Below are positions 4,871 to 62,210 of a DNA stretch of 64,000 nt, one piece after another. Where the stretch lies: assembly GCA_964252035.1 (NCBI GenBank), contig OZ176201.1; one strand, 5' to 3'. Position 1 is the first letter of the stretch; the number at the start of each line of letters is the position of its first letter. The position numbers and the translations under genes were made by a program. This DNA is from Podarcis erhardii. Its lineage: Eukaryota. The notes beneath the pieces were generated by a model. That model ran no database searches. It was not told the DNA's origin and worked only from the letters and a program-made list of their open reading frames with translations.

Positions 4871-6724
4871 TCTAGTACCAGATACCAGGAGGCTATTGCT
4901 GGAGCTCTGCTCTCCCCGGGTGAAGTACTTCTGTCAATACGAAGGAAGTGTTGCTAATGGCAGAGGACAGAGATGAAGGCTGTGACTGAATGTTGCAGGT
5001 GCTGTAACACAACACATGGGAAGTCTTCAGCCTGTCCAGTGATGCCAGTGACATTATTGGCCTCTGCACTTTGGAGAGCTTCCTTCATTCCACATTGTGG
5101 CATTGGACTATGCAGCCCATGCATTTCCTCCTCTGCTTCTGAGTAAACATACCCCATGGTTGCTGCCCAAGGCAAAGACCAGAAATGGTCAAAGGACATA
5201 CTGTGTGCAGATGTGCTTAGCCTATTGCACAGGATTCATTGTTCTGGATAGCAAAGATGGGTGTAATACTGCAAGTCCACAACTTAAGGTTTCTAAGAAA
5301 AGGGTGGGGAGGAAGCAAGTAGCTTTCAGTTAGCATGGTATGAAATTGTCTTATTGAAGCACACTGTCCTAAGCCATTGTATAGGATTAGCAGTAAGAAG
5401 AAGCTTTGCTTCTGGGTTCTCCAACTCCCATTTCACACCCTTAACACACCACTACATACGTCTTGTCACAATTAGTGCAATTACCTAGCAAGTGCATATT
5501 TCAGTATGAATACTGCCGAAGGTTCTTTTCGTATTTCATTTTTATTTGTTTGTCCTAAAGAGCAATGCATATCCAAGCAAGGGATTAAATCTCTTTCTTG
5601 AAGTGCAGCAATAAAATTGTAGTTGTAATGAAATTCAGCTGATATATAGGGTGGTATTTTATTTAGCCTTTTGAATAAAAAAGCAGTTTCCATTCCTGAT
5701 CAGAATAATTCATGGCTGTGCAGCTGAATCCAAGTTTTAATTGTCCTTGTTTTTCATATATAAGTTAAATATGGTTTGGATTAATTGTCACCATATACAA
5801 TCAGGTTTGTATATGCCTCTGTGAATCTCTATGGAAGATGCATTCAGGTTGAAGAGCAATTCATTTCTTTAGTAGTATTAACAAAACAAGAATCCTATTT
5901 CCATATTTTTGCAATTATACACTGAGACTTATCATCAGCAAAGAAAGAAGTAATTTGGGTTTTATAAAAAGGAACAGTTCAGTCCTGATTTTCTTTAAAC
6001 CATTTTTCCAATATTCGTACAAACAGGCAGATACATGTTTACTTTAAAGAAATATGCCAGTCACGGGATACACAATTTGGTTATCTGTCCCATCGTATTC
6101 TGAACCTAAATTCACTTCTTCACTAAAAGGCACAACTTACTCATTTCATGGACCATTACCTTCCCAGGCCAGATTTTCAGGTGGAGGCTCTGTGTGCTAC
6201 CAGCGGGCCACGATTTCCAGTTCATAATTGTAGTTCCCCACAAACACTGTAATTATGTGGATAAACTCATCAGCCTTAAGAAAATGCTCCACTGGCACAA
6301 GTACTCTCTGCCTTACAGCTGGCTTGTCAAGCACACACAGCAGCGTAAATGGGCTCTGGAAAGTGTTTAAGGCTCAAAAAGACTGGAAGGGCATCTTGCC
6401 CAAGTAATGGCAGGAAGTAGAGGATGAGGGAGAAATTGAGGTCAGTAAGGTTTTAATGTGAACCTATCTAATTGGCAGTTCCCCAAGCAATACACAAACT
6501 GAAACACAGTTATCCTTCAGAATTCACACTTATCCAAATTGTGCAATGTTCACCAGCCTAAAAGTGTGTACAAAATCCATCTATTGGGGCATGTGTGGAT
6601 AAAAATGCAAATATCAGTGAAAATAGCATACAAAATGCATTTAATTCACTTTCCAAAAACTGCACACCCTCCAACATTTTCTGATGAAAATAGCGTACGA
6701 CCCATTCCATAATGATAATTTTAC

Positions 6725-6860
6725 TATTTATACCCCACATATCTTCCTGGGTTGCCCCAGCCACTCTGGGCAGCTTCTAACATATATAAAAGCATAATAA
6801 AACATTAAACATTTTTTTAAAAAAACCCTTCCATATACAGGATTGCCTTCAGACACCTCA
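6725..6860 (-). mobile_element. L2 LINE 3' end
   Basis: Reverse complement of gaagctgcccagagtggctggggcaaccc...ggggtataaata, the same terminus as the L2 at 21080-21465. Confidence 0.65.
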
Positions 6861-6984
6861 GGAGTTGGATAACTCCATTCCCTCCAACATTTCTCCAATG
6901 AAATTACAGATGTTCTAAGGAAAAGTGGGACTTTCCAGAATCAAATCAGAAACCAAGATGGTTTCTCTAAATCAGGGACATCCC

Positions 6985-8946
6985 AGACTTCCGGGTTAGC
7001 GCCATCGCCTTATGGCGGATTCCCTCCGAGCTCCGGAGGGAATCGGCTCAGTAGGAGACGGGTCCTGCCGCCACGGCGACACGGGGATCCTCAGAAACCA
7101 CAGGCGCTGAAGCCTGTGGACCTGGTGACTCGGCGGGCACCATCTGCGCCCTCCCCGACCCGAGAAGGAGCCTTTTTAAAGGCTTTGGAACGGGGGACGG
7201 GGAGAGGCGCGGTGCTGAGAGTCGACTGCTACTCCTACTGAGGGAAGCCGCATGCCATGGTCGGAGAGCCCTGACTTCTTCCTTTGAACATTTGGACCCA
7301 AAGTAAAAGCCCGTGAGTAATATGGCAATTGGATTTATAAAAGAAAGATTTTTTTTTTGTCTGAATTCGGCACGATCGGGGAAGGCGCAAAGAGGAAGTC
7401 CATCTCCCCGCCTTGTAAACAATTTGAAGCAAGGACTAAATAACTAAGGTCGAGAGAACATCTCTTTTTTATTGGATAAAGCTATTAATTGCACAGATTG
7501 ATAGGATAAGTAATTGTGCTGGAGGACAAGAGCTAACTTTGAGAGCTAAAGTGCCACCCCCCCCCGGGACCCGGGAGTGATCCGCGAGAGGAGCCTGTTG
7601 AGGAGACACAGAAGATTTTGACAGTTGTCAAATTAGCTGTCAAAGTTGGAAAAAATAGAGAACTTTGTTTCTGATGTTCTTGCTGGTTACATTAGTTACA
7701 ATATAATTATAAATTGTTGAAAATAAAGAAGAACTGAAACAAGTTAACTTGACTTTTGGGCTGGAAGTGGAAGGAATACTGAATAACCAGAATCCCTCTA
7801 GAGGGGGTTCAGGGACATTACAAGAATGGATATAGGTCGAAAAATACTAGCTGATCTGGATGAGGTTTTTTTTCTCTTGGGAAAGTTGCAAGAGCAAAGT
7901 CATGTTTTGTCTACAAGTGTCACAACTTTGAAGTCAACAGTAAATAAATCTACTGAGTTGGATAAGGACTTGATGTACAAAGTCCAGGCAGCTGAACAAG
8001 AAAAGAAATTTGAGAAATTTGAGGAAGTGGAGAAAGAGATATATGCTGAACAGGAGGAGCAGGAAGGAGGGGCTGTAATGCTGCAGAAGGCAAAGGAGAG
8101 CCGGAGGCCTGTCAAGATGGATATAAAAGAAAATAAGGACTGGATGATGAAAATTTGGTTTGAATTGAAGAATGAGGAATGGAAAGATCTCCTTCTGTGG
8201 AGATCTGAAGATCTATGGACTATAAATCTGATTAAGGTGGAAGTTGGAGATTTTGGGACATTTGGACTTAAAAGGATTAAGAAACAATATTTGAGCTCCA
8301 CCTTTAAATATGGAGGTCTGGCTGGAAGGAACATGGACATTATCGGGACAGAGCCCCTCCGAGATTTGGTGTTTAATACAAAGGACTATAAAAAAAACCG
8401 GCAGAGAGGAACTGAGAGAGATTTAAGAGCCTCAGACATGAGGTCTCCAGGCTGATAGCAGATGGACTAATGGACAATGGTTCAGGGATCGAAACCGGGA
8501 AAGGGAGGGTGGGGTTTGGGAATCCAAAGGGTGTACAAATATATTCTGATTCTTTCTATTTTTTCATTTTTTGCTTTGTGATTAGTATAAAAATGGGGAA
8601 TTCGTGGAAGGGAAATTGGGTCAATCTTAGAAAAAGTCTTTAAGTATGACGATTGATGTATATAAGTTAAAATTTGATATATAAATTGAATTAAATATAA
8701 TAATAAATTAAGGTTAAAAATTAGGGATAAGAACTTGTTGAACAAATATTTGGACATGGAATACAAGAAGGCGAGGCGAGGGGAAGTTGCGGAAAAAAGT
8801 TATTGAAAATAAGGACTGTAAATGTTGAATGTCTTTTAATTCTGCTTTTTCTTTCTTTATTTTATCTTTTCTGGAAAATTGTTTTGTCGTTTTTTGCTTT
8901 TGTGTATTATTTGAAACTCTAATAAATATCATTTTAAAAAAATAAA
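6985..8946 (+). mobile_element. Full-length non-autonomous L1/Tx1-type retroelement (~1.96 kb, no RT)
   Basis: 17-bp TSD taaatcagggacatccc at 6968-6984 and 8947-8963. CpG-rich 5' end starting agacttccggg, one ORF, and an L1-like 3' UTR with aataaa and an A-rich tail. Confidence 0.85.
7826..8455 (+). CDS. 209-aa E/K-rich coiled-coil ORF of the non-autonomous element (ORF1-like)
   Basis: Uninterrupted ATG-to-stop ORF inside the TSD-bounded element. The N-terminal half is E/K/Q/L-rich with a heptad-like pattern; no RT or endonuclease motifs. Confidence 0.55.
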   Translation: MDIGRKILADLDEVFFLLGKLQEQSHVLSTSVTTLKSTVNKSTELDKDLMYKVQAAEQEKKFEKFEEVEKEIYAEQEEQEGGAVMLQKAKESRRPVKMDIKENKDWMMKIWFELKNEEWKDLLLWRSEDLWTINLIKVEVGDFGTFGLKRIKKQYLSSTFKYGGLAGRNMDIIGTEPLRDLVFNTKDYKKNRQRGTERDLRASDMRSPG

Positions 8947-9494
8947 TAAATCAGGGACATCCCTGGAATATAGGGACACTTGGGGGATCTGAAACTATTT
9001 ATTTGACAAAATTGCATATGGAAATGTGTATATTGAGAGAAATGCACACAAAAATACTGATGAATTTTCATGAAGACTTTTAAAGAAGAAACTAACGCAT
9101 CTAAAGCAGAAATATAATAAAGGAAGTTGGTAAAGGAGCAGCTAAGAGATACCAAAACTGACTGACTTGTCCTTCCCAAGCAACAAGGCAACCCTTGAAA
9201 CCTGACAAGACAATCATATCTATAGCTTGTAATTCAGGATTCCAACTAAGTTGCTGTTGCTTTGCTTTTATATGCCTGTGATCTGGGATGCAGTGTACAC
9301 TTATTGAACATGATAACATAAGGAATCTAGAATATACTGCAGATTCCTATGAATTATATAGTTCCTAAGTTTGGTGTCCTACTACCATTTCTCCAAGAGT
9401 GATGTTTCATTGTGTGAAGACATCTAAGTTGAGAGATGGTGAGTCACCCAGTGAGCTTTATAAGCATAGGGAAAAATTGAAACTTGGGCTGAAA

Positions 9495-9830
9495 TCGTAA
9501 GAAAAGTCTGCTGGATCAGGCCAATGGCCCATCTAGTCCAGCACCCTGTTCTCACTGTGGATAGCCAGATTCCTGTGGGAAGCCTGCAAGCAGGACCTGA
9601 GCACACGGACACTCTCACCTCCTCCAGTTTTTATTAACTAGCATTCAGAATGATACTGCCTTCAAGCATGAAAGCAGAGCCGAGCCACTATGCCTTGTAG
9701 CTACTGATAATCATATTGTCCACGAATTGGTCAAATCTTCTTTCAAAGCCATCCAAGTTGATGTCCATGCCTGCCTGTGGGATCAAGTCCCATAGTTTAA
9801 CTATGCACTGTCCTGAACTTCCTTTTATCT
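9495..9830 (-). mobile_element. CR1-type LINE 3' region (or CR1-tailed SINE)
   Basis: Starts aagaaaagtctgctggatcaggccaatggcccatctagtccagca, the reverse complement of a typical squamate CR1 3' end. Confidence 0.55.
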
Positions 9831-9849
9831 GTCGCGAGTTATTGCATCC

Positions 9850-10610
9850 AAGTCTAGTTTTCTTTTCTTTTCTTTTCTTTTTCTTTTCTTTTACTTTACT
9901 TTATTTTCAAAAATTACAACATAAAATATAAACAAAATAATACATTAATAAAAAAAATCAAAGAAATAAAAAAAGAAAAAAAGAAAAACAACCACAAAAC
10001 TTAAACAAACATACACTTTGACTCCCTTCCATCCTTTTGAGACTGCAACTTTTCATTTTATCTTAATTGTTGTGTTATATATATGTATATATATGTTAAA
10101 GGTAAAGGTACCCCTGACCATTAGGTCCAATCGTGAACGACTCTGGGGTTGCGGCGCTCATCTTGCTCTATAGGCTGAGGGAGCTGGCGTTTGTCCACAG
10201 ACAGCTTCCGGGTCATGTGGCCAGCATGACTAAGTCGCTTCTGGCAAACCAGAGCAGTGCATGGAAATGCCGTTTACCTTCCTGCCAGAGTGGTACCTAT
10301 TTATCTACTTGCACTTGATATGCTTTAGAACTGCTAGGTGAGCAGGAGCTGGGACCGAGCAACGGGAGCTCACCCTGTTGCAGGGATTCGAACCACTGAC
10401 CTAGCTTTATACCTTTTATAACAATTTCTTCATTCCCTTGACCTTGCAAACTTCATTCATTACATACCGATATGTTTATTCCAGAGCAATGTTTTTTTTC
10501 ATATACTCTTTAACACAGTCCCATTCTTTTATTAATTGTTTATCTGATTGTCTAGTTTTCTAGGCCGGAGTCATACTGGCTCATTCTAGATTTGTTATAA
10601 AATGCAGGAA
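9850..10610 (-). mobile_element. L1-type LINE 3' fragment, interrupted by a Sauria SINE
   Basis: Minus strand encodes IKEWDCVKEYMKKN, comparable to EEEWKKFKDYLNKN at the C-terminus of ORF 59284-60024. It continues into a T-rich 3' UTR and (ttttc)n tail. Confidence 0.55.
10098..10402 (-). mobile_element. Sauria SINE (Squam1), 5' end missing
   Basis: aaaggtaaaggtacccctgaccattaggtcc...ggattcgaacc; homologous to 37737-38094, 42657-43021 and 56179-56523. Confidence 0.9.
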
Positions 10611-10800
10611 GCTATTGGGCTCATATCCTGCTTGTGGGCTTCTCATAGGCTTTAGGTTGGGCCATTGTGAGAAAGCCACTTCCGGGCCTGCCCCAGGAGG
10701 TGGGGTTGCGGGCTTCACGCCCACCCCACGTGAGCGGGGGCTGGCTCCAGCCCCCGCGAGAGCAAGGGATTCCCCGTCGGGCCGGCCCCCCCCCAGCCAG

Positions 10801-10875
10801 CCAATCAGCTGGGCGGCTGGGGGGCGTGGCTTGCCCTATTTAGGGCCAGCGCGGAGGGGGCTCGCTCTCTTTTCG
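10801..10875 (+). promoter_or_regulatory. Pol II promoter-like cluster in the mini-element
   Basis: CCAAT at 10801, GC boxes gggcgg (10811) and ggggcgtggc (10821), TATA-like tattta (10837), and a pyrimidine-rich Inr/TCT-like ctctcttttc about 30 bp downstream. Confidence 0.55.
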
Positions 10876-11058
10876 CCGGCTCGCCCCCACGTTTTCCCAC
10901 CCTCCCTCCCTTTCAGTAGGTTAGGCTTAGTCAGGCCTTTGACATTGCTATGGACTTCGGTCTGTCGCCGCAAGGGGCATGGTAGGAATTTTTCCCAATT
11001 GGCAACTTCGGGCCTTTTGGTTTTTCGCCTACTTCGTAGCAACTCGTCACAACTTCTC

Positions 11059-11355
11059 GGCATTGGCGGTAGGCATTGGTAAGAAGGGGTTAAGACGATG
11101 TGGGGGGGGGGAGGAACGCCATCACTTCCCCCCAGCGAGCGAAGGGTGGTCCGTTAAAGGACCCCGGGGGTGTGGCCCTGTCCGAAGCCTATGGAGGTGT
11201 GGGCCAAAGGCACGCCCCAGAGCGGTGACCCGGGGGAGCTCCTAGCCGACGTGCCTCGCGGGAGTCTCCCCCGATATAAGGTTAACCCTTCCCCGTGTCT
11301 CCAGCAAATGGGCTGGAGCCGGATAGCCGTTAGGACCAATGCCTATGCCAATGCC
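11059..11355 (+). ncRNA. Candidate structured RNA cassette, copy A
   Basis: Closing inverted repeat ggcattggcggtaggcattggt (11059-11080) / accaatgcctatgccaatgcc (11335-11355). Internal hairpins ggtcc-gttaaa-ggacc, ggggtgt/acgcccc, ggccc/gggcc and ctccagc/gctggag. Homologous to copies B and C. Confidence 0.55.
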
Positions 11356-11361
11356 TCTCAT

Positions 11362-11376
11362 TCCTGAATTCAATAA
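11362..11376 (+). terminator. Poly(A) signal with conserved downstream motif (aataaagttgtggcc)
   Basis: The identical 15-mer follows cassette B on the minus strand (58281-58295), and a GT-rich tract lies downstream. Confidence 0.55.
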
Positions 11377-14373
11377 AGTTGTGGCCTAATTCGCCCAATT
11401 AACCTTACATACGGTGTCTTGTGTCTTTATTTATCCTGGTGGGGGCGGGAACTCGCCACGCAAGAAATGCTGGCCCAGAAAGGCCTTTGGTCTGATTCTA
11501 CAAGGCTCTTACATACTTATGATGAAAGAAAAGTGTCAAGTAGTGAGACCAGTGTTTGCTAAAGGATATAAAACTATGGCCAGTAAAAAAGGACTTCATT
11601 CCTGATTACTTCTTGTTTCACGCCTAGAAACCACATCCTGCTCTGCTGCCCCATTACTGTAGCTTACATCCTCTCCTCTGCTTCTCAGAATCCTCTTTGG
11701 TAGGTGACAAATGCTAATGGGGAGGGTTGCTCTTCATTATCACAAAGATAAATGTTCAATTCCCCCACTGCAAATCTCAAGTCCATTACCATGTGCTCAG
11801 TAAACATCTGTTGCCCCCCCCCCAATCCAAGGAAGTGTTGATTTCATTATAGAGCTGACAAAGATGTGGGCAATACAAACTGCAGAAGTAGAAAAAGTAA
11901 ATCTGAGCACCGCAGAAAATTGCTGATGGCACGAATTTATCTGTATATCCGCTTGTCCTTTTAGACAGCTCATCTGCAGCTGGGATCTCAGCATAGGATG
12001 CAACTCATCATAAAAAAACCCCTAAGAAGAGCACAGCTTTCATGTTGTGATTAGAGTATATATACTTTTCATTACACCATGCCATTCAAATTGCTTCCTG
12101 CTGTTGGCTGATCATCTGATGGGCTATTGTTCGCAAAGCAATTGCTGTATCTGAGCAAGTCTATAGGAAAAGAAAGCTTAGGAAGAGCTCACAATAGGAT
12201 GAGGCATTTGTCCCTTCTCAGGAATCAAATCAGATGACACAACAGGGAAGCTAAAACAAATATCTGCATGACTGAGCTCAAGCTCTGATCATCTGGGAAA
12301 GAGAGGGGCAAAAAGGCATCTGTTTTTTTATGAATATGAAATGGGACTCGTTGTGCCTGAGCAAAGAACTGGTGCATCTCTGCAAAATGAAAAGGAAGGA
12401 TGCAGATTAGAGTAGTGAAAGCAGGTTAGTAGCAGTTGCTAGAAAAAGGAAGAAATTGATCCTCCAATGTCTGAGGATAAGATTTTTTAAATGCAGAAGA
12501 TTTTAATATACAGCGTTTGGGGCGGCTGTAATCTAGAGATATATTTAAAGTTTCCAGCTCTCAGGAGAGGGTCAGTGCTTTTAACAACACTCCTCTAGGC
12601 ATACATTCAGTAGGATGCGTTTTATTACATTTTGATCCCACTCTTACTGCTGTTCTACACTGTGGTTAATATTTTGATAAATGATGTATCTCTTTTCCAG
12701 GCTTTTGGCTTACCATGATCATGGTTATTGCTGTTTCTCCATGTTTTGGGGGGTGTTATATTATTTGAAGCTTGAAGATTGATTTTACTTGTGTTTGTAA
12801 GTCGTCTAGAGATATTTTGTATTAGGTGACAAATAATTACAGTGCCCATGCTGCTTTTATGCAGCTCATATAATCCAGAATGCCCTTATTTTTCTCTCTC
12901 GTACACTGCATCATTACAGCATCATCAGTGCAGCAGACCCAGATCCTACCACTGGGAGTAGCGATGGGACCTTCAAACCTAAGATGTGAACATTGGTTAC
13001 CGGATGTTGTGCCTTACCAACAAAATGCTTTGCAAACAGATAGATTATGGCTTTTATTTTTTGCAATAAACCGCAAACTCTGGAAGCATTTGCATTTATT
13101 ATTTAGATGTAACTTTATTTTTTATTCTGATGCCCAGGTAACCACATTTGTTATAACAGCTAACACAATGTTATGTTATGGTTTATTTATATGCACCACT
13201 TCTGGGCCCAGAGTCCCCAAAGCAGTGAACAGTTTATTAATAGAAAATAAACATACAATAAAAGTACAATAAATGCCATCCATCAATCAACACACTATGA
13301 GTTCTGTCAAACCCATTTCCTCCCTACTTTTAAACTGTGTCTGTCAGAGGTGATTACCTAGAAACCCTCTAAGCAAAACAAATGGAATGGAGGAAGGAAT
13401 GAGAAATTGAGGAAGGGAGGGAAGGAGGAGGAGAATGAAGAAACACAACCACATTGCTCTGTGACCTCCATGATGGAGCAGGGTTCAAAGAAAATGGACA
13501 TCTATCTTGATAAACCCATTTTATATATCCTGATTTAAGTAGAAAACAGAGAGGTAATGAAATTGAAACAATAAAGTAGATATATTCCTGGTGGGGCAGT
13601 AGATATATTCCTGTTTACGTTAGGCAGCACTAAACAGTTGAAATGATTCCCAAGAAGTAATTTATCAAACTGCACAAAGTACTAATAAGACTGGACCAAG
13701 CAAGAAACCAAACACCTGTTGTATAGTATGATACAAGAATAGTTATTCCTGGAACACTGAGGAGTCTTGAGACTGTGCACAACCTCCACCTGCCTCAATT
13801 TCATCCCTCTGAACTTGGGTTTGCAGCAAGCCACAGTTTACTGTTGCATCGCAAACATGGCTTGCCATTACTACTTGTGTTCTGAGCACAGCAGAACCCA
13901 GATGACTGCATGTGGTAAACCAAGGATTTATGAATTACAAAACTCTCTGAAAGGAGTTAAATCAGAAGCATATACTGGCACAAGATAAATAACTTACAAT
14001 GTCTTTCAACTTATCCTTTGGGTCTAGCTCAAACTCTTGTGTCGCTGACATGATGATGTAGCAGCTGATTACCAGCAAGGAGTAGGTATATAAATTGAAT
14101 TCTGGTGCCACAAACCTGCATTCCAATCTGCTCCATCTTAACTGTGTCGGTATAAGGCATTTTGCCATGAAACATGACTGCCTAAGAAATGCCGTAAGGT
14201 GCAACAATAAATAAAACAATTGCATTGGAAAAGGGGACTGCTGTACTAAGAGACAATCTCCTAGTTGTTAAATTTGAGATATGAATTCTGCGTGAGTGCT
14301 ACCGTTAGCAGAGGACTGCAGGACTGATTTGTTGTTTAGCGTTGTCCATTTGGATGTTTTTCTTGTTTTACAG

Positions 14374-14394: not shown

Positions 14395-15281
14395 GTTAGT
14401 TGGAGACTTCAAGTATTATTTATTATGTGAATATTATGCCTGAGGAATTGGATCACATCAGTCAGCTTTACTGGTCTGTTGGTGTCAGCAAATTGAGTTT
14501 CCTTTCTGAGCACATATTCCTGCTCCCAAACTCCTGATCAGGTTAAGCATTTGTGGTGGTGCTGCCTCTGCAGTCCCAGTAACTGCTCTGTTCTGTGTAC
14601 TTCATCGTACTGGTCTGAATTAGTAGAAGATAGGGGAAGAGTTTGTTTACAGTTCTGTGAGAAGCTTGTGGGTACGTTTCAGCCTCTGGAAATTCCTAAC
14701 ATTGCAAATTAATAAGATCAGATAATATAAAAGAAAAACACCTGGTATTGTTTTGAGTCCAATAAATGCTATTTTAGGAAATGAAACTGTGCCTTTTTCT
14801 GGATTATACCGCTTTTCCTTCTCGAATTTATTTAAGCTAAAAAAAGATAGCTATCAGCTATAAATTTAAATCACTAGGGCTACTGCTCATATTATAAACT
14901 ATATACCACCTACCCAGCTACTAGGGTAATCCATTTTCACCAAAGCATCATATAAGAGTGTCCTATAGGAATCCAGAAGTATAAGGAATTGAGCAAACTG
15001 TGAGGAAAAGTTAGCTGTGTATGTATGTGTTCTAGACAATGTGTGGGCATATCCATCCCTCCTTATTCCCATTGCAAGCTTTAGCTCATTATTGAGAGGA
15101 TGAGGTCTAGCACCAGTGGAAAAAATACAAGATTGTGGAAGCATCAATGAAGAAACAACTTAAAGAGTATGAGATATAGAAGATCCATTAAAAGGATCTC
15201 CAAGGTTTTGGGCAGGTCAGTTTTTTATTTTTAAAACTGAGGTGGGTTAGGAATATAGATGCATTACTCTTTCAGTTTCTC

Positions 15282-15396
15282 TTGTTGTTTAGTCATTTAG
15301 TCGTGTCCGACTCTTCGTGACCCCATGGACCAGAGCACGCCAGGCACTCCTGTCTTCCACTGCCTCCCGCAGTTTGGTCAAACTCATGCTGGTAGC
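15282..15396 (-). mobile_element. BovB (RTE) LINE 3' end, 5'-truncated
   Basis: Same sequence as 4700-4815. Confidence 0.8.
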
Positions 15397-56523: not shown

Positions 56524-58322
56524 ATATATGTATACACGTATATAAATGAATTACATATATATCTTCATGCATATATATCTTCATGCATGTGCCTGTGTAT
56601 GAGCATGAGTATGTTTCAACCAACAGATGTTGGAAGAGAGTAAGTGGGCACAAGGTTTAGTTAAAGCAAAATTCACAAAATATTACTTTATTTGGTCATT
56701 GGTAGAGTTCCTTGCTTTGAATGTTTACACTGACCCAAATTCAGCTACAATTAAAAGTTCTTAGCAAGACTGGGGTAGTGTTCTTCTTGAGACACTGGAC
56801 ATCTGCTTCCAAGCAGTATTAAGCTGAATTGGGGCTGGAGAGCCTTTTTGATCCATGTATCCAGTTTTTTATCTGTCCCCACATGCATGGGTCAAGTTTG
56901 ACAGGTGGGCAGAATAACCCACAGATCAAAGTTCTTTGCACTGTACAGTGTTTCCAGCCCTATGCTCAGTATTTGTGAACCAGTGGGCCAATGGTCTGGA
57001 ACTCAGGCCCCTTCCAGACCTATTTGCTTATCTAGAATTTTGGCGTAGTAACTTAAGAATGAGAGAAAGCAGTGGATGAACATCATACTGTATGATAGGG
57101 TGATGCAATGAGAAGAGAAACTGCAGATATCACAGAATCATGCAACTCCCACTCATTTTAATGTGATTGAGCTAGGACAACTGCCGACATCCCCAAAGAA
57201 AAGTAAGAAATGATGTTCCTGCATGCTATTTAAATGATGTCCCTACATGCTATTTAAGGAAGAATGCAAGATTTTGGATATCACAAGAACACAGAATGCC
57301 TTCTGCATAGGTCACATCTCATAAAAATGGAATTTACGACTGAATCAGAAGACAAAATGATTTCAATAGGCCTTTCTAACTGCTAAGCAAGCTGGATTGC
57401 CTTATGAAAACAGGCAGATTCCAGAGCTTCAGAGCTGCACAATGTAGAAAGGGGTCTTTAAAAAAAAAAAAAATCAACACAAGTTGCCATAAGATAAGGG
57501 AAGGGACATAGATCACACACATAGTAAATCCTCAGGTTATGCTGCCAAACCAAGGTAAAATTAGAGTTTCAAGAAGAAAGCATGAATCAGACGCAAAACA
57601 TGTTTTGAAAAGTCATTCTGTTTTTGAACATTTCTGAGGAAGAAAAAGTACTTTAAAGTAGACATGGTTTATGTGTAATCACTCTGGGAAGGCTTCGTTT
57701 TTCATTGGTAAATGTCAGCAAATATCAGTTTCTTTGTATATATACAGCAACAGAAGAAAAACGAACTTCCAGTAATATACCGATATTATAGACCAGTAAA
57801 ATATGCCGACAGGAAAGTAATGAAAGCTCCATAAACCATGTGTATATCAACTGGAAAATACAGAATTATTTTGAAAGCTATTACTTCTTGACTGATCCTG
57901 AGACCTGCCTCATGAACATTTAAATTAGCAGTTTTCAACTTTCAGCCTATAGGGAACATTTTCCATAGTGACTTATAGAATTGCAACCATTTGTATTATG
58001 GGCCATATTTTAGGATTAGGACAAACAATGCAGGGCACCGGCCAGACCTCATCAACTAACTGAGAATCTGACATATGCTGCAATCCTATATTCACTTATC
58101 TGCAAGTAAAGACTTATATTTGAGTCAACCCTATACACATCTATGTTGAAGTAAGCTCCACCTCCATGGGACTTGCTCACGGGTAAGCAGTTGTGTGTTG
58201 AGGTCCCCAAGACACCCCCCCCCCCCGAAGAAAAACACAATTGACACTTAATTTTTGTTTAAGGTTTTTGGCATAATTTTGGCCACAACTTTATTCAAAT
58301 ACAGCTATGTGAATGGTTGTTT

Positions 58323-58670
58323 AGGCATTGGTAGCACTAACTGCCCCCACACGGGGACAGCTCTGACATTTGCACCCCCCACGAGGTCAGGAAGGGTAAG
58401 TCACCTGGGGAGAGAGACGGGACTGGGAACCATGCCTCACCTCTCCCCAGCATGCTCCCAGGGGCTTGCGTGGCCCTAGCCCCTTGCCAGGGGGTTTCGG
58501 ACAAAAGCATGGGGGAGCCCCTGGGTTCCTTTAACGGTAAAACCCTTCAGCAGCAGCATTTTGGAGGGGCAGGCACAGCCGAATCCATACCCCTCCACCA
58601 GCAGCAGCATTTGGGGGGGCAGGCACAGCCGAATCCATACCCCCCAGCAACCAATTCCAGACCAATGCCT
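58323..58670 (-). ncRNA. Candidate structured RNA cassette, copy B (normal 3' position)
   Basis: Inverted repeat at 58323-58332 / 58661-58670 and the same internal motifs as copy A. It lies between the hydrolase stop (58709-58711) and the poly(A) signal (58290-58295). Confidence 0.55.
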
Positions 58671-58708
58671 AACCGCCAACTGAGCACTGAAGCTCACCGC
58701 CAAACCAC

Positions 58709-58949
58709 TCACAAATGCAACCCTTCCTTCAATCCCAAAGCAACCGCATCCAGCCAGGTGTCGTTCCCCATAGGGGAAAGATGCACCCCATCTGCAAGGT
58801 AACAGCAGGGTGCAATATCACAGATCCACTGTTATTTTATTTTATTTTATTTTATTTTATTTTATTTTATTTTATTTTTTAATTTTTTTTAATTTATTGT
58901 ATTTTATTTTATTTTCCACCGCCTTATTAACATGCTTTCTGGCCTGCTC
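58709..58949 (-). pseudogene. SGNH hydrolase ORF, C-terminal half
   Basis: EQARKHVNKAVEN [AT-rich expansion] SGSVILHP / YLADGVHLSPMGNDTWLDAVALGLKEGLHL*. DGVH at 58781-58792 is the SGNH block V DxxH motif. Confidence 0.75.
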
Positions 58950-58960
58950 GGTGGCAGTTT

Positions 58961-60311
58961 TTTTTTTTTAAATATATATAAAATATTTATTAAAGTTTTC
59001 AAAAAGTTATCTAAAATAGAAAAAACAAGAGAAAGGTAAAAAGAAAAAATACATACAAAACATAAAACCCACATACAATAACAAGTATAGTTTCAGTCCC
59101 TTATGTTCATAAGCCTTACTTTCCCGACCTCCTCATACCTCCCCTTCCTGTATCCCAATCTCTAATAATTCAATTCCGCAAATCCTTCCCCTTATCTCAA
59201 TTAGTTTTTTTTTAATCTTCCTTTTTTTGATACCTAATCATTACAGCTGAAAACCCCTTACTTTCTAGATCCATATAGTTCTATCATTCAATAATTTTAC
59301 AATTTTTATTAAGGTAGTCCTTAAATTTCTTCCATTCTTCTTCCGCCGTCTCTTTTCCCTGGTCTCGGATTCTGCCAGTCATTTCTGCCAGTCCCATATA
59401 GTCTATTACTTTCATCTGCCATTCTTCAACGGTGGGTAGATCTTCTGTCTTCCAATACTTTGCGATGAGTATTCTTGCTGCTGTTGTGGCGTACATAAAG
59501 AATGTTCTGTCCTTCTTTGGCACCAATTGGCCGACCATGCCCAGGAGACAGGCCTCTGGTTTCTTCAAAAAGGTAAACTTAAATACCTTTTTCATTTCAT
59601 TATAGATCATCTCCCAGAAAGCCTTAATCCTTGGGCACGTCCACCAAAGGTGAAAGAATGTACCTTCAGTTTCTTTACATTTCCAACATTTATTATCAGA
59701 CAAGTGGTAAATTTTTGCAAGCTTGACTGGGGTCATGTACCACCTATAAATCATTTTCATAATATTCTCTCTTAAGGCATTACATGCCGTAAACTTCATA
59801 CCGGTGGTCCACAACTGTTCCCAGTCAGCAAACATAATGTTATGACCTATATCTTGAGCCCACTTGACCATAGCTGATTTAACCGTTTCGTCCTGGGTAT
59901 TCCATTTCAACAGCAAGTTATACATTCTTGATAATATTTTAGCATTGGGTTCTAACAGTTCTGTCTCCAGTTTTGATTTTTCCACCTGAAAACCGATTTT
60001 CCTATCTAACTTATAAACCTCCATTATCTGATAGTAATGAAGCCAATCTCACACTTTATTTTTCAGTTTCTCATAACTCTGCAATTTCCATTTGTCCCCT
60101 TCTTGGTCCAGAATCTCCCCATATTTCGGCCATTTGGATTCCATATTAAGTTTTTTTTACTGCCTTTGCCTCCAATGGAGACAGCCACCTTGGAGTTTTA
60201 TTTTCCAGCAAATCTTTGTACTTGACCCAAACATTATATAATGCTTTCCTAACAACATGATTTTTAAAAGCTTTATGGACTTTCACCTTGTCATACCACA
60301 AATATGCATGC
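58961..60311 (-). mobile_element. 5'-truncated L1/Tx1-type LINE
   Basis: ORF2 C-terminus, 3' UTR and poly(A); TSD cggtgg(c/t)agttt at 58949-58960 and 60312-60323. Confidence 0.9.
59284..60024 (-). CDS. L1-type ORF2 C-terminal region (zf-RVT)
   Basis: RWYMTPVKLAKIY...CWKCKETEGTFFHLWWTC zinc-knuckle motif. Confidence 0.8.
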   Translation of the reverse strand: MEVYKLDRKIGFQVEKSKLETELLEPNAKILSRMYNLLLKWNTQDETVKSAMVKWAQDIGHNIMFADWEQLWTTGMKFTACNALRENIMKMIYRWYMTPVKLAKIYHLSDNKCWKCKETEGTFFHLWWTCPRIKAFWEMIYNEMKKVFKFTFLKKPEACLLGMVGQLVPKKDRTFFMYATTAARILIAKYWKTEDLPTVEEWQMKVIDYMGLAEMTGRIRDQGKETAEEEWKKFKDYLNKNCKIIE

Positions 60312-60327
60312 CGGTGGTAGTTTGTCT

Positions 60328-60607
60328 AGGCATTGGTTCCGACGATCTGCACCCGACCTCAACAGGGCAGCACTGACGACTGGGCCCCACCATATCGTCA
60401 GTACAAGCAAACATCGTGGGGGAGCAATGAACCAGGATCAGACTCAAGCACACCCCAAATGCTCCAGGGACCCTTGCGTGGCCCTACCCCTCGAAAGGGG
60501 TCGACAAAAGCATGGCGAATCCTTGGATTCCTTTAAAGGATTACCTTTGCGCATTGGAGGGGACAGGTGCTCCGACCCCCCCTCCAGACTACCTTGAACC
60601 AATGCCT
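60328..60607 (-). ncRNA. Candidate structured RNA cassette, copy C (inside the hydrolase ORF)
   Basis: 12-bp perfect inverted repeat aggcattggttc (60328-60339) / gaaccaatgcct (60596-60607); cc-tttaaa-gg loop and acccct-ttcg-aggggt hairpin on the minus strand. Confidence 0.55.
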
Positions 60608-60609
60608 TA

Positions 60610-60897
60610 AATTATTTTGAGTCCAGGGAGAGCTGCCATCAACTCATCCAAGTCCTCCTGCATGCAGGAACGCAAACTTATGCTGTAAGAAGACGGCAAG
60701 TGATTCTTGTCCAGCTGCACCACTAGCACTGCGGGAGGACCTGCACAGGTCACACTCAACCGCACCAAAGGAAGGAACTCCTCCCAAAGCATTCCCCATC
60801 TGGACACCCAGTATATGTTCACATGGGCAGGAAGACTGAGATGGTGCCCCAGTCCAGACTCGTCAGTGCGCTTGCCAGCCCAGTGTACAATGCTTTA

Positions 60898-60928
<31 letters not shown>

Positions 60929-61009
60929 ATTTTATTTTATATTTTCCACCGCCTTATTAACATGCTTTCTGGCCTGCTCAACTGCCAATCTAAATGTGCA
61001 CAGCTGCTC
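60610..61009 (-). pseudogene. SGNH hydrolase ORF, N-terminal half
   Basis: VHI*IG [insert] SIVHWAGKRTDESGLGHHLSLPAHVNIYWVSRWGMLWEEFLP...GPPAVLVVQLDKNHL...MQEDLDELMAALPGLKII. These are degenerate G(H)S and G(G)ND blocks. Confidence 0.75.
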
Positions 61010-61050
61010 CTATGAAAAAAGGAAATAACAGACAGGCATCAGCACAGACA

Positions 61051-62051
61051 TCATTGGTGACACTTCCTGATGTAACCCTTGTCAGCATCAGACTTCCAAT
61101 GACCAGTATTCACAATCCTGTCTACTGACAGGCCCCCAGTGTGCAGCCTTTGCAGCAGCCCTATTCGGAAGGAATGAGGCGTGTTCAGCGGTAGGCAAGC
61201 CGCAGGCCATAATAACTGGTGCACGACGTAAGCACATTGATGCCTGGCTAACGGGAACCCATTTTCATGCACTAGGAGCGGGCCAGCCCCCAGGGGAATG
61301 AAAAGCCAAATATTTCTGGTATCCATAACTAGGCAAGGGCGCTCCTCACCTGTGAGGGGAAGCCTGATGGTGGCACTCCTGCCCACTAGGTCTGTTTTAG
61401 AGTTCCCCACTCTAATGCCCAGCTCCAAAGCAGATAAGGAAAAGTCCTGAAGCATTAAGCCTCCAGACTCAGCCCCGTGCTGGCTCCAACACAATTTCCC
61501 CAACCGTCAGTGCACCAAAAATGCAATGGAATACTGAAAGGAGTCTCACCTTGATCTTTAACCAGCAGACAAGTTATAACTTGTTGCAGATACTGCATAG
61601 GTAAAAATTGACCGACTTCCTGCCCACTGTCCTATGAGGTTGGAGCCTATTCCAACCTTCCAAGGCCCTGCGCACGACAGACTTTATACAAGGGTATCTG
61701 CAAATTAAAGCTTTACTATAACAGACATTGCAGAGGACTGAATACTGATAGTTTTAACAGCACATCCAATCTGCAGCAGGTGGACCAAATATTGCAGGAA
61801 CTGCTAGAGGATGGGGGCCAGTTCTTCTGAATGGCCGAGGACTGCCAGCTTAAGGCTAAGAATTCCATCCAGGCCTTCCCATAAGAGCTAAAAGCAGAAG
61901 GGGAAATGGAAGCTGTTGCTATCTGTAATTGACAACTAATTATGTCAAAGTGCCACAGGTGGTCTGGAAAAGTCTGGCAGTAGCTGAGTGTCTGGAGCCC
62001 AGGATCTGAAGCGCTCCATCTGAAAATGGGATAGAGTGTCAGCAACATCAT
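61051..62051 (-). pseudogene. Tyrosine recombinase, frameshifted
   Basis: N-terminal SISPSAFSSYGKAWMEF and C-terminal HSFRIG...GHWKSDADKGYIR, matching the DIRS-type HSFRIG / GRWxS / YIR motifs. Confidence 0.85.
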
Positions 62052-62210
62052 TAGAGGATCCCGTAATCAGGAGAGCATAAAGCACAATATTAAACCTTAA
62101 GCAGCGCAGCTCGAAGCGTGAGCGGAGGGGCAGAGACTCTGCTGGAGCATGAGGACTGTCTTGCCAAGACGCTCACCACTGCCTGGTTATCAGACCAAAA
62201 GCAGTTTGAT
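61960..62210 (-). pseudogene. RT-associated RNase H C-terminal remnant
   Basis: FWSDNQAVVSVLARQSS and CLRFNIVLYALLITGSSNDVADTLSHFQMERFRSWAP, matching DIRS-type DN..VV and N..AD.LSR motifs. Confidence 0.8.

What the first reader, a model, noticed from the sequence alone, without database searches (positions are those of the whole stretch)
11059..11376. Conserved structured RNA cassette in tyrosine-recombinase retroelements: three divergent copies with one fold (A here; B 58323-58670; C 60328-60607)
Seen in sequence: three segments with 254-328 nt between arms share little primary sequence but are each closed by the same inverted repeat AGGCATTGGT...ACCAATGCCT (about 21 bp with a bulge in A, 12 bp in B and C). 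Read in the element's sense, all three keep the same ordered modules. These are (i) a G-rich/C-rich hairpin, (ii) a CC-[G/T]TTAAA-GG hairpin with a conserved loop, (iii) a stem whose sequence covaries (A ggggtgt/acgcccc, B aggggct/agcccct, C ggattc/gggtcc) and encloses TGTC(C)GA-variable hairpin-GGGCCA, and (iv) variable 3' hairpins. A and B are followed by aataaagttgtggcc. Established: Ngaro/DIRS elements encode RT, RNase H and a tyrosine recombinase, integrate via DNA circles, and lack a tRNA primer site. Inference: conserved structure with divergent sequence points to a functional RNA (or ssDNA) module. The long closing stem around a structured core recalls retron msr-msd architecture, so it may prime RT, signal packaging, or define the recombination substrate. 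I do not know of a description of this module.
Basis: partly seen in the sequence, partly recalled or inferred. Interest (0 to 1): 0.85.

Follow-up and report, generated by a model that had tools for sequence, protein, structure and literature searches.

The report
Folded RNA domain in lizard Ngaro repeat
The three look-alike segments are real: they are the folded first three quarters of the "B" terminal repeat (the 3' untranslated end) of Ngaro-type jumping genes in lizards, a conserved RNA shape that has not been described and may help explain how these elements copy themselves.

Summary
Observation confirmed. A (11071-11344 +), B (58323-58670 -) and C (60328-60607 -) are homologous and closed by AGGCATTGG/CCAATGCCT. 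I found 15 more copies in Podarcis muralis and Zootoca vivipara loci.

The cassette always sits between the stop codon of the last ORF (an SGNH hydrolase) and AATAAAGTTGTGGCC in Ngaro-like elements (gag, RT/RNase H, tyrosine recombinase, SGNH). It is the first ~280 nt of the Ngaro "B" split direct repeat. Window copy A is an ORF-less A-X-B unit. B and C probably belong to one composite element split by a LINE.

Independent folds of the 17 complete copies give the same helices. A covariance-model alignment pairs 70.7% of cells (37-53% when partners are slid), with compensatory changes in H2, P3, H4 and next to the invariant 9-bp stem core. G-U outnumbers A-C 40:16, which favours the sense strand. 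RNA-seq covers the cassette in sense. A gecko element has a closing stem of unrelated sequence at the same place. The frog's equivalent region is not significantly structured. Rfam and two full-text searches gave nothing.

Best reading: a cis-acting RNA domain at the 3' end of the genomic RNA. The retron analogy is unsupported and the function is inferred.

The scan noted related elements elsewhere in this genome (s1-229703, s1-268850, s1-232458).

The parts
10672..11463 (+). Copy A as a whole: an ORF-less A-X-B unit of a Ngaro-like family. It is flanked by AAAG / AAG at the crossover.
   Evidence: 10668-10895 matches the first 224 nt of the intact element in L002 at 86%. 11064-11463 matches its last 400 nt at 93%. 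The termini CCACTTCCGGG and AACTCGCCACGC are shared with other copies. The unit aligns end to end with the A2-X stretch that lies between B1 and B2 in L011.
10672..10895 (+). 'A' repeat: a CpG-rich promoter-like region with an ETS-like CACTTCCGG, a palindromic CCAAT box, a GC box and CCTATTTAGGG.
   Evidence: Read directly from the sequence. In L011, A2 is 100% identical to A1 over 207 nt. Promoter activity itself was not tested.
10896..11063 (+). 'X' spacer between A and B. It ends with GTCACAACTT (11046-11055), which is complementary to AAGTTGTGGC just after the poly(A) hexamer.
   Evidence: Conserved blocks are shared with L011 A2-X, L010b and L011a. The duplex is predicted. The frog has GTCACAGCTT / AAGCTGTGGC, a compensatory change.
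11059..11080 (+). 5' arm of closing stem P1 in copy A. The invariant core AGGCATTGG is at 11071-11079.
   Evidence: The core is invariant in 15 of the 17 complete copies. The next pair inward is U-A, A-U, G-C or C-G depending on the family.
11101..11134 (+). H1: the G-run / C-run hairpin.
   Evidence: Predicted independently at the same alignment columns in nearly all copies.
11141..11291 (+). Four-way-junction core closed by P2 (GAAGGGT 11141-11147 with ACCCTTC 11285-11291). It holds H2, the P3 domain and H4.
   Evidence: Core-only folds of the 17 copies. Model R1 scores the copies 73-142 bits.
11148..11163 (+). H2: a 5-bp stem with the conserved loop GTTAAA.
   Evidence: 92.9% of cells are paired. 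Pair 11/24 reads UA:9 GC:4 CG:2 GU:1, and pair 12/23 reads UA:13 CG:2 UG:1.
11166..11218 (+). P3 domain: an outer covarying stem, an inner stem formed by TGTCC (11179-11183) with GGGCC (11201-11205) that includes a conserved U-G wobble, and a variable apical hairpin.
   Evidence: The outer helix is 89.7% paired, with GC/AU/UA/UG/CG variants at three pairs. The U-G (or G-U) wobble at pair 54/80 is present in 17 of 17 rows.
11226..11284 (+). H4: a long hairpin (GGGGGAGCTCC... with ...GGAGTCTCCCCC) on a short base helix (TGACC with GGTTA).
   Evidence: Six of its nine main pairs change on both sides, and 75% of cells are paired. It is found in the independent folds.
11293..11323 (+). H5: a variable 3' hairpin (CTCCAGC with GCTGGAG). 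Families B and C carry a further hairpin, H6.
   Evidence: Hairpins of unrelated sequence occupy the same alignment columns in all families.
11335..11356 (+). 3' arm of closing stem P1 in copy A. The invariant core CCAATGCCT is at 11336-11344.
11372..11386 (+). AATAAAGTTGTGGCC: the poly(A) signal plus a conserved box.
   Evidence: Present after nearly every copy. The gecko and frog variants carry GCTGTGGCC. In stranded RNA-seq, sense depth falls from about 12 to about 2 just after it.
11387..11463 (+). 3' tail of the B repeat, ending in ...CGCCACGC at the element terminus.
   Evidence: RNA reads join 11461 back to 10672.
58191..58676 (-). Copy B: a B repeat of a second family. The cassette is 58323-58670, AATAAA starts at 58295 on the - strand, and the tail runs to about 58191.
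   Evidence: It is 70% identical to L011 B1 and B2 over 58191-58576. R1 scores it 95 bits.
60328..60607 (-). Copy C: a cassette of a third family, about 450 nt downstream of a decayed tyrosine-recombinase ORF. Its poly(A) box is degenerate.
   Evidence: R1 scores it 86 bits. Window 62204-60312 is collinear with L011 102305-104375 at 91-92% identity.
61054..61503 (-). Remnant of the tyrosine-recombinase ORF of the element that carries copy C (HSFRIG ... GHWKS ... Y).
   Evidence: Translation. There were 335 homologues at E<=0.001, and the best full-length ones are Podarcis proteins matched at their C-terminus.
59037..60312 (-). LINE fragment inserted between cassettes C and B. It is not part of the feature.
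   Evidence: 80-85% identical to LINE copies in L001. The 246-aa ORF has an L1-type C-terminal CWKC motif (the motif reading is my own knowledge).

Best explanation
The cassette is the structured 5' three quarters of the 'B' terminal repeat of squamate Ngaro-like retrotransposons. These elements carry gag, RT/RNase H, a tyrosine recombinase and an SGNH hydrolase.

In the sense RNA it forms the 3' UTR. A long closing stem (9-bp invariant core, 12-45 bp in all) joins the stop-codon region of the last ORF to the base of the AAUAAA signal. The stem encloses a G/C hairpin (H1) and a four-way junction. The junction holds H2 with its GUUAAA loop, the P3 domain with a conserved U-G wobble, and the long hairpin H4. 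One or two variable hairpins follow.

Shown:
- the position of the cassette;
- its membership of the B repeat;
- a shared fold with compensatory changes;
- a sense-strand wobble bias;
- presence in sense transcripts.

Inferred: it acts in cis on the RNA. Most likely the element's own RT or Gag recognises it, to select the template and to start or guide minus-strand cDNA synthesis or strand transfer between B copies. My odds are about 0.7 that it is a selected RNA-level element, and about 0.35 for the RT-recognition or priming role specifically.
For: Position. In the intact 7.4-kb element of L002 the cassette starts about 35 nt after the SGNH ORF stop codon and ends 27 nt before AATAAA. All 18 detected copies share this context.

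B repeat. In L011, B1 and B2 are 99.5% identical over 424 nt, and each begins just upstream of the 5' arm. The frog element has the textbook A1...B1-A2-(X)-B2 layout, and its B starts at the same GGCGGT motif.

Fold.
- Independent minimum-free-energy folds of the 17 complete copies (about 8-10 families, about 50% mean identity) place the same helices at the same alignment columns.
- On the model alignment 70.7% of cells pair, against 37-53% for slid partners. The covariation score is 0.240 against 0.08-0.158, and 0 of 500 shuffles reach it.
- The pair next to the invariant stem core takes all four Watson-Crick forms.
- The gecko element has an 11-bp closing stem of unrelated sequence at the same place, 279 nt apart, with fold z = -5.6.

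Strand. Among pairs chosen by a strand-neutral rule, G-U outnumbers A-C 40 to 16 (p = 0.002). One U-G wobble is kept in 17 of 17 rows.

Expression. Four RNA data sets cover the cassette, mostly in sense. Depth drops after AATAAA, and reads from full-length elements cross the ORF/cassette border.

Open question it bears on. The primer for DIRS-order reverse transcription is unknown, and a 3' hairpin has been suggested for DIRS-1 (PMC7192593).
Against: - No experiment links the fold to any step of replication.
- The alignment used for pair counts was fitted to a structure taken from copy A. The sequences are related, so the shuffle control overstates significance. Several modelled helices fit families B and C poorly (52-67% paired).
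- Both strands fold about equally well by z-score, so a DNA-level role is not excluded.
- The 9-bp stem core is invariant across lacertid families whose other stems covary. This points to a sequence-specific constraint that pure RNA pairing does not explain.
- The frog's equivalent region is not significantly structured (z = -0.4), so the fold is not a general Ngaro feature.
- ORF-less A-X-B units can arise by A1 x A2 recombination, so their keeping the cassette does not prove a cis requirement.
- The RNA reads were mostly 90-95% alike, meaning they came from paralogues. The depth drop after AATAAA is therefore suggestive only.
Confidence: 0.5

Rival explanations
1. It is a post-transcriptional element that serves host machinery rather than the RT. 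It would act like a retroviral CTE or hepadnaviral PRE for export or stability, as a device that tunes use of the adjacent poly(A) signal (B1 versus B2), or as a fold that brings the stop codon next to the poly(A) tail.
For: It lies exactly between the last stop codon and AAUAAA, where CTE and PRE elements lie (my own knowledge). The closing stem ends within a few nucleotides of the hexamer. In the X context the box right after the hexamer pairs with GTCACAACTT, but not in the ORF context. The two B copies are therefore presented differently. Sense coverage drops just after AATAAA.
Against: There is no similarity to any Rfam family. Intronless multi-ORF transcripts do not obviously need an export element. 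The conserved loops and internal loop suggest a specific binding partner, but nothing identifies it.
Confidence: 0.2
2. The selection is on DNA, not RNA. The inverted repeat and its hairpins would act in the double-stranded or single-stranded cDNA, for instance as a binding site for the recombinase, as a cruciform, or as CCAAT-box enhancer elements upstream of the A promoter in the circle or in B1-A2.
For: The 9-bp core is invariant and contains CCAAT/ATTGG, giving four such boxes with the outer arm. B lies directly upstream of the A promoter in B1-A2 and in the junction reads. The minus strand folds as well as the plus strand by z-score. DIRS-1 uses single-stranded cDNA intermediates (PMC7192593).
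Against: The crossover (AAAG) is at the B|A junction, about 120 nt from the cassette. The gecko closing stem has no CCAAT. G-U outnumbers A-C 40:16 and one wobble is fully conserved, which favours the sense strand. The A promoter has its own CCAAT box at a normal distance.
Confidence: 0.12
3. There is no selected function. A GC-rich, hairpin-prone terminal repeat simply keeps inherited palindromes, and the apparent covariation comes from relatedness and model-fitted alignment.
For: Most copies are decaying. The shuffle control is known to be exceeded by related sequences (tool note). The frog region is unstructured.
Against: Helices recur at the same columns in folds made without any alignment-derived constraint, in families only about 50% identical. 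Hairpins of unrelated sequence occupy the same positions. The slid controls are far lower. The gecko has a new stem at the same place. The wobble bias is strand-specific.
Confidence: 0.1
4. It is a retron-like self-priming unit. The closing stem and inner hairpins would present a 2'-OH or 3'-OH from which the RT makes a short cDNA.
For: Only the architecture supports this: inverted repeats closing a structured core, next to an RT-encoding element whose primer is unknown.
Against: The RT is a eukaryotic RVT_1 type with RNase H, not a retron RT. It lies about 1.5 kb away, with two ORFs between. The RNA data gave no sign of a discrete ~300-nt RNA or of short cDNA. The cassette is duplicated as a terminal repeat, which retrons are not.
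Confidence: 0.04
5. It is a foldback or MITE-type DNA element that inserted into the 3' UTR.
For: It has terminal inverted repeats of 9-21 bp around about 260-330 bp.
Against: All 18 copies found in 373 kb sit at the same place in Ngaro elements, preceded by GGCGGT and followed by the poly(A) box. None stands alone. There are no target-site duplications at the arms. It is duplicated as part of B1 and B2.
Confidence: 0.02

Closest known systems
Ngaro split direct repeats (A1-[ORFs]-B1-A2-B2; Goodwin & Poulter 2004, as described in PMC9210276 and PMC8547959)
   Same: The cassette lies inside the B repeat. B1 and B2 are near-identical in L011 and in the frog. A is the 5' repeat. The element has RT/RNase H, a tyrosine recombinase and the amphibian-type SGNH ORF.
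   Different: The papers I could read describe B only as a repeat. I found no report of a fold in it. The lizard B is about 400-425 nt, against 152 nt in Xenopus DIRS-53_XT (PMC9210276). Both lizard and frog have an unrepeated spacer X between A2 and B2.
3' UTR RNA structures recognised by non-LTR RTs (R2 3' UTR, stringent-type LINE 3' stem-loops; own knowledge)
   Same: Both are structured domains of a few hundred nucleotides at the 3' end of the element's RNA, with the fold kept and the sequence free to drift.
   Different: Those elements use target-primed reverse transcription, and RT binding has been shown for them. Here the RT is LTR-like, integration is by a tyrosine recombinase, and binding is untested.
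DIRS-1 internal complementary region and the 3' hairpin proposed as primer (PMC7192593, citing Poulter & Goodwin)
   Same: Both are in the same order of retroelements, both are non-coding sequences near the 3' end needed or proposed for replication, and in both the primer is unknown.
   Different: The ICR works by complementarity to the element's ends, downstream of first-strand synthesis. It is a junction template, not a folded domain. The DIRS-1 hairpin is 14 nt. I found no sequence similarity.
Retroviral CTE and hepadnaviral PRE (own knowledge)
   Same: Both sit between the last ORF and the poly(A) signal, and both have a long stem with conserved internal loops.
   Different: There was no Rfam match of any kind, and binding to export factors is untested.
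Bacterial retron msr-msd
   Same: Both have inverted repeats closing a structured non-coding core near an RT gene.
   Different: The RT clade, the kingdom, the distance to the RT and the duplication as a terminal repeat all differ. There is no evidence of msDNA.

Membership tests
Ngaro-like tyrosine-recombinase retrotransposon (order DIRS) | ORF with reverse transcriptase (and RNase H) | tested here: met
   The 640-aa ORF2 of L002 hits RVT_1 at 48.3 bits, above the cut-off of 29.6. RNase H was not separately detected by Pfam.
Ngaro-like tyrosine-recombinase retrotransposon (order DIRS) | Tyrosine recombinase ORF instead of a DDE integrase | tested here: met
   ORF3 of L002 ends with HSFRIGAATTA...GRWKSDAYKRY. 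It gives a weak Phage_int_SAM_4 hit. The window ORF 61054-61503 has 335 homologues.
Ngaro-like tyrosine-recombinase retrotransposon (order DIRS) | Split direct repeats A1 ... B1-A2-B2 | tested here: met
   In L011, A1 (99949-100155) equals A2 at 100%, and B1 equals B2 at 99.5%. The frog L013 shows the same layout. RNA reads hold the B-to-A junction. None of the three window copies has the full set: A is a single A-X-B unit.
Ngaro-like tyrosine-recombinase retrotransposon (order DIRS) | SGNH hydrolase ORF after the recombinase (amphibian-type Ngaro), and no methyltransferase domain | tested here: met
   ORF4 of L002 hits Lipase_GDSL_2 weakly (23.5 bits), and several homologues carry PF13472. 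No methyltransferase hit was found in any of the four ORFs.
Any described RNA family (Rfam 15) | Score at or above a family's gathering threshold | tested here: not met
   Zero hits for the whole window. Only chance-level hits turned up at E up to 5 around A, B and C.
Retron msr-msd | Retron-clade RT encoded immediately next to the non-coding RNA | tested here: not met
   The RT is a eukaryotic RVT_1 ORF inside a four-ORF retrotransposon. The recombinase and hydrolase ORFs lie between it and the cassette.
Retron msr-msd | Branched RNA-DNA (msDNA) primed from a conserved G next to the closing stem | not testable with these tools
   This needs nucleic-acid biochemistry. The RNA-seq laid here shows no discrete short species, but that does not settle the question.
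MITE / foldback DNA element | Independent copies with target-site duplications outside the host element | tested here: not met
   All 18 model hits in 373 kb are in the same Ngaro context.
RT-binding 3' UTR domain (works-like class, not a sequence family) | Specific binding by the element's RT, and dependence of cDNA initiation on the fold | not testable with these tools
   Only the position at the RNA 3' end and the fold conservation could be shown.

The most novel reading that the evidence does not exclude
The cassette is the long-sought start site of reverse transcription in Ngaro-type elements. The element's RT or Gag would bind the GUUAAA hairpin and the P3 internal loop. The closing stem would place the RNA 3' end for priming. 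The two B copies would mediate a strand transfer that builds the circle junction. That would give the DIRS order a defined origin of cDNA synthesis.
Probability: 0.2. Interest if true: 0.8.

Novelty: new member of a known kind. Interest (0 to 1): 0.5.

Why it matters
How tyrosine-recombinase retrotransposons start and complete reverse transcription is unresolved. The DIRS-1 paper read here states that no primer has been determined (PMC7192593). A defined, conserved RNA fold of about 300 nt at the 3' end of the Ngaro genomic RNA, duplicated in the terminal repeats, gives a concrete object to probe, bind and mutate.

It is also of practical use for annotation. The core model finds Ngaro 3' ends and ORF-less units in lacertid genomes with high scores.

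The claim is bounded. The fold was seen in lacertids, with an analogue in one gecko, and not in the one frog element examined. Its function is inferred.

Tried and rejected
- Rfam at gathering and at permissive thresholds gave nothing.
- Pfam on the decayed window ORFs gave nothing useful. The recombinase was identified through the representative search instead.
- Three Logan contigs (L003-L005) were too short to reach the whole cassette.
- I looked for split or inverted terminal repeats inside L002 and found none. L002 is a plain A-int-B copy.
- Inverted matches between the promoter region and the cassette of copy A are not collinear, so I treated them as chance.
- RNAalifold on plain MAFFT alignments loses most helices once all families are included, because the registers differ. 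mafft-qinsi and mafft-xinsi are not installed. I therefore used a covariance-model realignment and independent folds.
- My first G-U/A-C count chose pairs by a rule that favoured G-U. I redid it with a strand-neutral rule.
- Model R1 found no hit in the gecko locus. The gecko analogue was found by position and inverted repeat.
- A tRNA-primer-site reading of TGGCGGT... was considered and dropped. Its complement lacks a T-arm-like sequence (my own inspection).
- The weak R1 hits (L007 9427-9601 at E = 0.044, window 15173-15302, L012 -, L006) were not followed up and were left out of the pair counts.

Full report
**Observation**

The exact 10-mer AGGCATTGGT occurs six times in the window. All six form three inverted pairs, at 11071/11344, 58323/58670 and 60328/60607. 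The arms are 254, 328 and 256 nt apart. Each folds better than its shuffles, with z-scores of -4.9, -2.8 and -3.3. The window has no N runs.

**What the segments belong to**

The decayed ORF at 61054-61503 (-), upstream of copy C, is the C-terminal half of a tyrosine recombinase. Its best full-length relatives are uncharacterised Podarcis muralis proteins. Fetching the loci that encode them, and the homologues of the downstream ORF, gave 13 loci:
- Podarcis muralis: L001, L002, L006-L008, L011, L012;
- Zootoca vivipara: L010;
- the gecko Paroedura picta: L009;
- the frog Eleutherodactylus coqui: L013;
- three short Logan contigs: L003-L005.

L002 holds an intact 7.4-kb element (5838-13242) with four ORFs:
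- a gag-like ORF;
- an RT ORF (RVT_1, 48 bits);
- a tyrosine recombinase ending HSFRIG...GRWKSDAYKRY;
- a GDSL/SGNH hydrolase.

It interrupts another repeat whose uninterrupted copy is in L001. This fixes its ends at CCACTTCC... and ...CGCCACGC, with AAAG on both sides. The cassette (12850-13125) starts about 35 nt after the hydrolase stop codon. AATAAAGTTGTGGCC follows 27 nt after it, and the element ends about 90 nt further on.

A pattern scan and a covariance-model search found 18 cassettes in 373 kb, one of them cut by a contig end. All are in this context.

**The cassette is part of the Ngaro B repeat**

In L011 two near-identical cassettes lie 808 nt apart. The 425-nt blocks that contain them are 99.5% identical (B1, B2). 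Of the 387 nt between them, the first ~210 nt are 100% identical to a block 5.9 kb upstream (A1, A2). The remaining 177 nt (X) are unique.

The frog element shows the same A1...B1-A2-X-B2 layout, and its B begins at the same GGCGGT motif. RNA reads laid on copy A include a joint from 11461 back to 10672, which is the B-to-A junction CACGC-AAAG-CCACTTCC.

Window copy A (10672-11463) aligns end to end with A2-X plus B. It is therefore an ORF-less A-X-B unit, and the same kind of unit occurs in L010 and L011. It may be a recombination remnant (A1 x A2), or a unit able to move on its own. I could not tell which. I did not check that note.

Window 62204-60312 (-) is collinear with L011 102305-104375 at 91-92% identity. 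The stretch with copy B matches the following L011 B1 at 70%. Copies C and B therefore probably sit in one composite element that carries two cassettes, split in the window by a LINE fragment (59037-60312).

**The fold**

Minimum-free-energy folds were made separately for each of the 17 complete copies. These fall into roughly 8-10 families at 50% mean column identity. The folds put the same helices at the same alignment columns:
- closing stem P1;
- hairpin H1 (G run with C run);
- P2, which closes a four-way junction;
- H2, with the loop GTTAAA;
- the P3 domain, in which the conserved TGTCC and GGGCC pair with each other around a variable hairpin;
- the long hairpin H4;
- one or two variable hairpins, H5 and H6.

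In the ORF context, P1 extends to about 40-45 bp. It takes in the last codons and the stop codon of the hydrolase ORF on one side and the bases up to the poly(A) hexamer on the other, with a small hairpin as a side branch.

A covariance model of the junction core (R1, 159 positions) scores all copies at 73-142 bits. Results on its alignment:

| Measure | Observed | Controls |
|---|---|---|
| Cells forming a standard pair | 70.7% | 63.7% in shuffles (0 of 500 reach it); 37-53% with partners slid by 1-3 columns |
| Covariation score | 0.240 | 0.08-0.158 with slid partners |

The clearest helices are H2 (92.9% paired; UA/GC/CG at one pair), outer P3 (89.7%) and H4 (six of nine pairs changed on both sides). 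The base pair next to the invariant 9-bp core of P1 is U-A, A-U, C-G or G-C depending on the family.

Caveats:
- The structure was taken from copy A.
- The alignment is fitted to that structure.
- The sequences are related.
- Some helices fit families B and C poorly.

The independent folds are the less biased evidence.

**Beyond lacertids**

The gecko element has the same four ORFs. After the stop codon comes an 11-bp perfect inverted repeat of unrelated sequence (TGAAGGAGCCT) with 279 nt between the arms, then AATAAATAAAAGCTGTGGCC. That segment folds with z = -5.6, but R1 does not detect it.

The frog's equivalent region has only a 9-bp stem around 97 nt and is not significantly structured (z = -0.4). 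The elaborate fold therefore looks like a squamate feature rather than a general Ngaro one.

**Strand and expression**

Both strands fold well by z-score. Among pairs chosen by a strand-neutral rule (Watson-Crick in at least 60% of rows), G-U outnumbers A-C 40 to 16 (p = 0.002). One U-G wobble is kept in all 17 rows. This favours the sense strand.

Two stranded RNA-seq runs, one single-cell run and one contig set cover the cassette, and the flanks are empty. In the stranded runs most depth is in the orientation expected for sense RNA. It falls from about 12 to about 2 in the bin after AATAAA. Thirteen reads carry the ORF-side sequence of full-length elements into the cassette. Most reads were 90-95% alike, so they come from paralogues. 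The poly(A) inference is suggestive only.

**Known or new**

Rfam has no match. Two full-text searches and the Ngaro/DIRS papers I read describe the repeats but no fold. The original Ngaro paper is not in the library, so an older description cannot be ruled out. The DIRS-1 study states that the primer for reverse transcription is unknown. It also mentions a small 3' hairpin proposed as primer.

**Reading**

The best-supported statement is that this is a selected, sense-strand RNA domain forming the 3' UTR within the B repeat. Its role is inferred. I rank the possibilities as follows:
1. recognition by the element's own proteins, for template choice, priming or B-to-B strand transfer;
2. a post-transcriptional role in export, stability or poly(A) choice;
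3. a DNA-level role, suggested by the invariant CCAAT-containing core;
4. no function.

The retron analogy and a MITE origin fail their tests.

**Limits of this work**

The covariance model covers only the non-coding junction core. The direct mobilisation test of an altered element is listed under referred steps.

Noticed in passing
window 11461 joined to 10672 (RNA runs X23, X21; contig set X15): Reads join the 3' end of the unit to its 5' end (CACGC-AAAG-CCACTTCC). This is the B-to-A junction expected from B1-A2 in split-repeat copies, from tandem copies or from circles. The data cannot tell these apart.
   Followed up: partly
window 11046-11055 and 11376-11385; L013 about 14915-14925 and 14583-14592: The end of spacer X (GTCACAACTT) is complementary to AAGTTGTGGC, which overlaps the poly(A) hexamer. 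The frog has GTCACAGCTT with AAGCTGTGGC, a compensatory change. The pairing is possible only in the A2-X-B2 context, not after the ORF, so it might make the two B copies behave differently.
   Followed up: partly
window 58191-62204 (-) compared with L011 102305-105863: Copies C and B look like two cassettes of one composite element (recombinase, cassette C, spacer, lost hydrolase ORF, cassette B). The 5' part is 91% identical to L011 and the 3' part 70%, which suggests recombination between families. A LINE fragment (59037-60312) is inserted between them.
   Followed up: partly
window 11071-11079 / 11336-11344 and all lacertid copies: The 9-bp core of the closing stem is invariant across families whose other stems covary freely. 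With the outer arm it gives four CCAAT/ATTGG motifs. No explanation so far accounts for this sequence constraint.
   Followed up: no
L002 5834-5841 and 13243-13246; L001 22028; window 10672-10675 and 11462-11464: Insertions sit at AAAG or AAG, which is present on both sides. An empty site for the L002 insertion exists in L001. The termini (C/A)CACTTCCGGG and AACTCnnCACGC are conserved across families and partly in the gecko (...ACACGC).
   Followed up: partly
window 10676-10860; L002 5838-6030: The A repeat reads like a compact RNA polymerase II promoter, with CACTTCCGG, CACGTG, a palindromic GCCAGCCAATCGGCTGGC, a GC box and CCTATTTAGGG. If the start site is about 30 nt after the TATA-like box, almost all of A is untranscribed. 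The RNA would then have to read through B1 into A2 to carry a copy of A.
   Followed up: no
window 10979 and 11329 (run X21): The loose ends ATTGCGCAATG + 8 nt + GGG look like a template-switch oligo with a UMI. They would mark RNA 5' ends at these two places. Each probably stems from one molecule.
   Followed up: no
window 10611-10668 and 11464-11496: The flanks of copy A belong to another expressed repeat. Reads show its uninterrupted form running across the insertion point.
   Followed up: no
L007 9427-9601 (+): A weak hit of the core model (16 bits, E = 0.044) lies inside another element. It may be a very diverged cassette or chance.
   Followed up: no
L001 21047-22100 and 26403-27456: Two 1054-bp direct repeats, 100% identical and 5.3 kb apart, are probably LTRs of a young LTR element. 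The same repeat is the one interrupted by the Ngaro insertion in L002.
   Followed up: no
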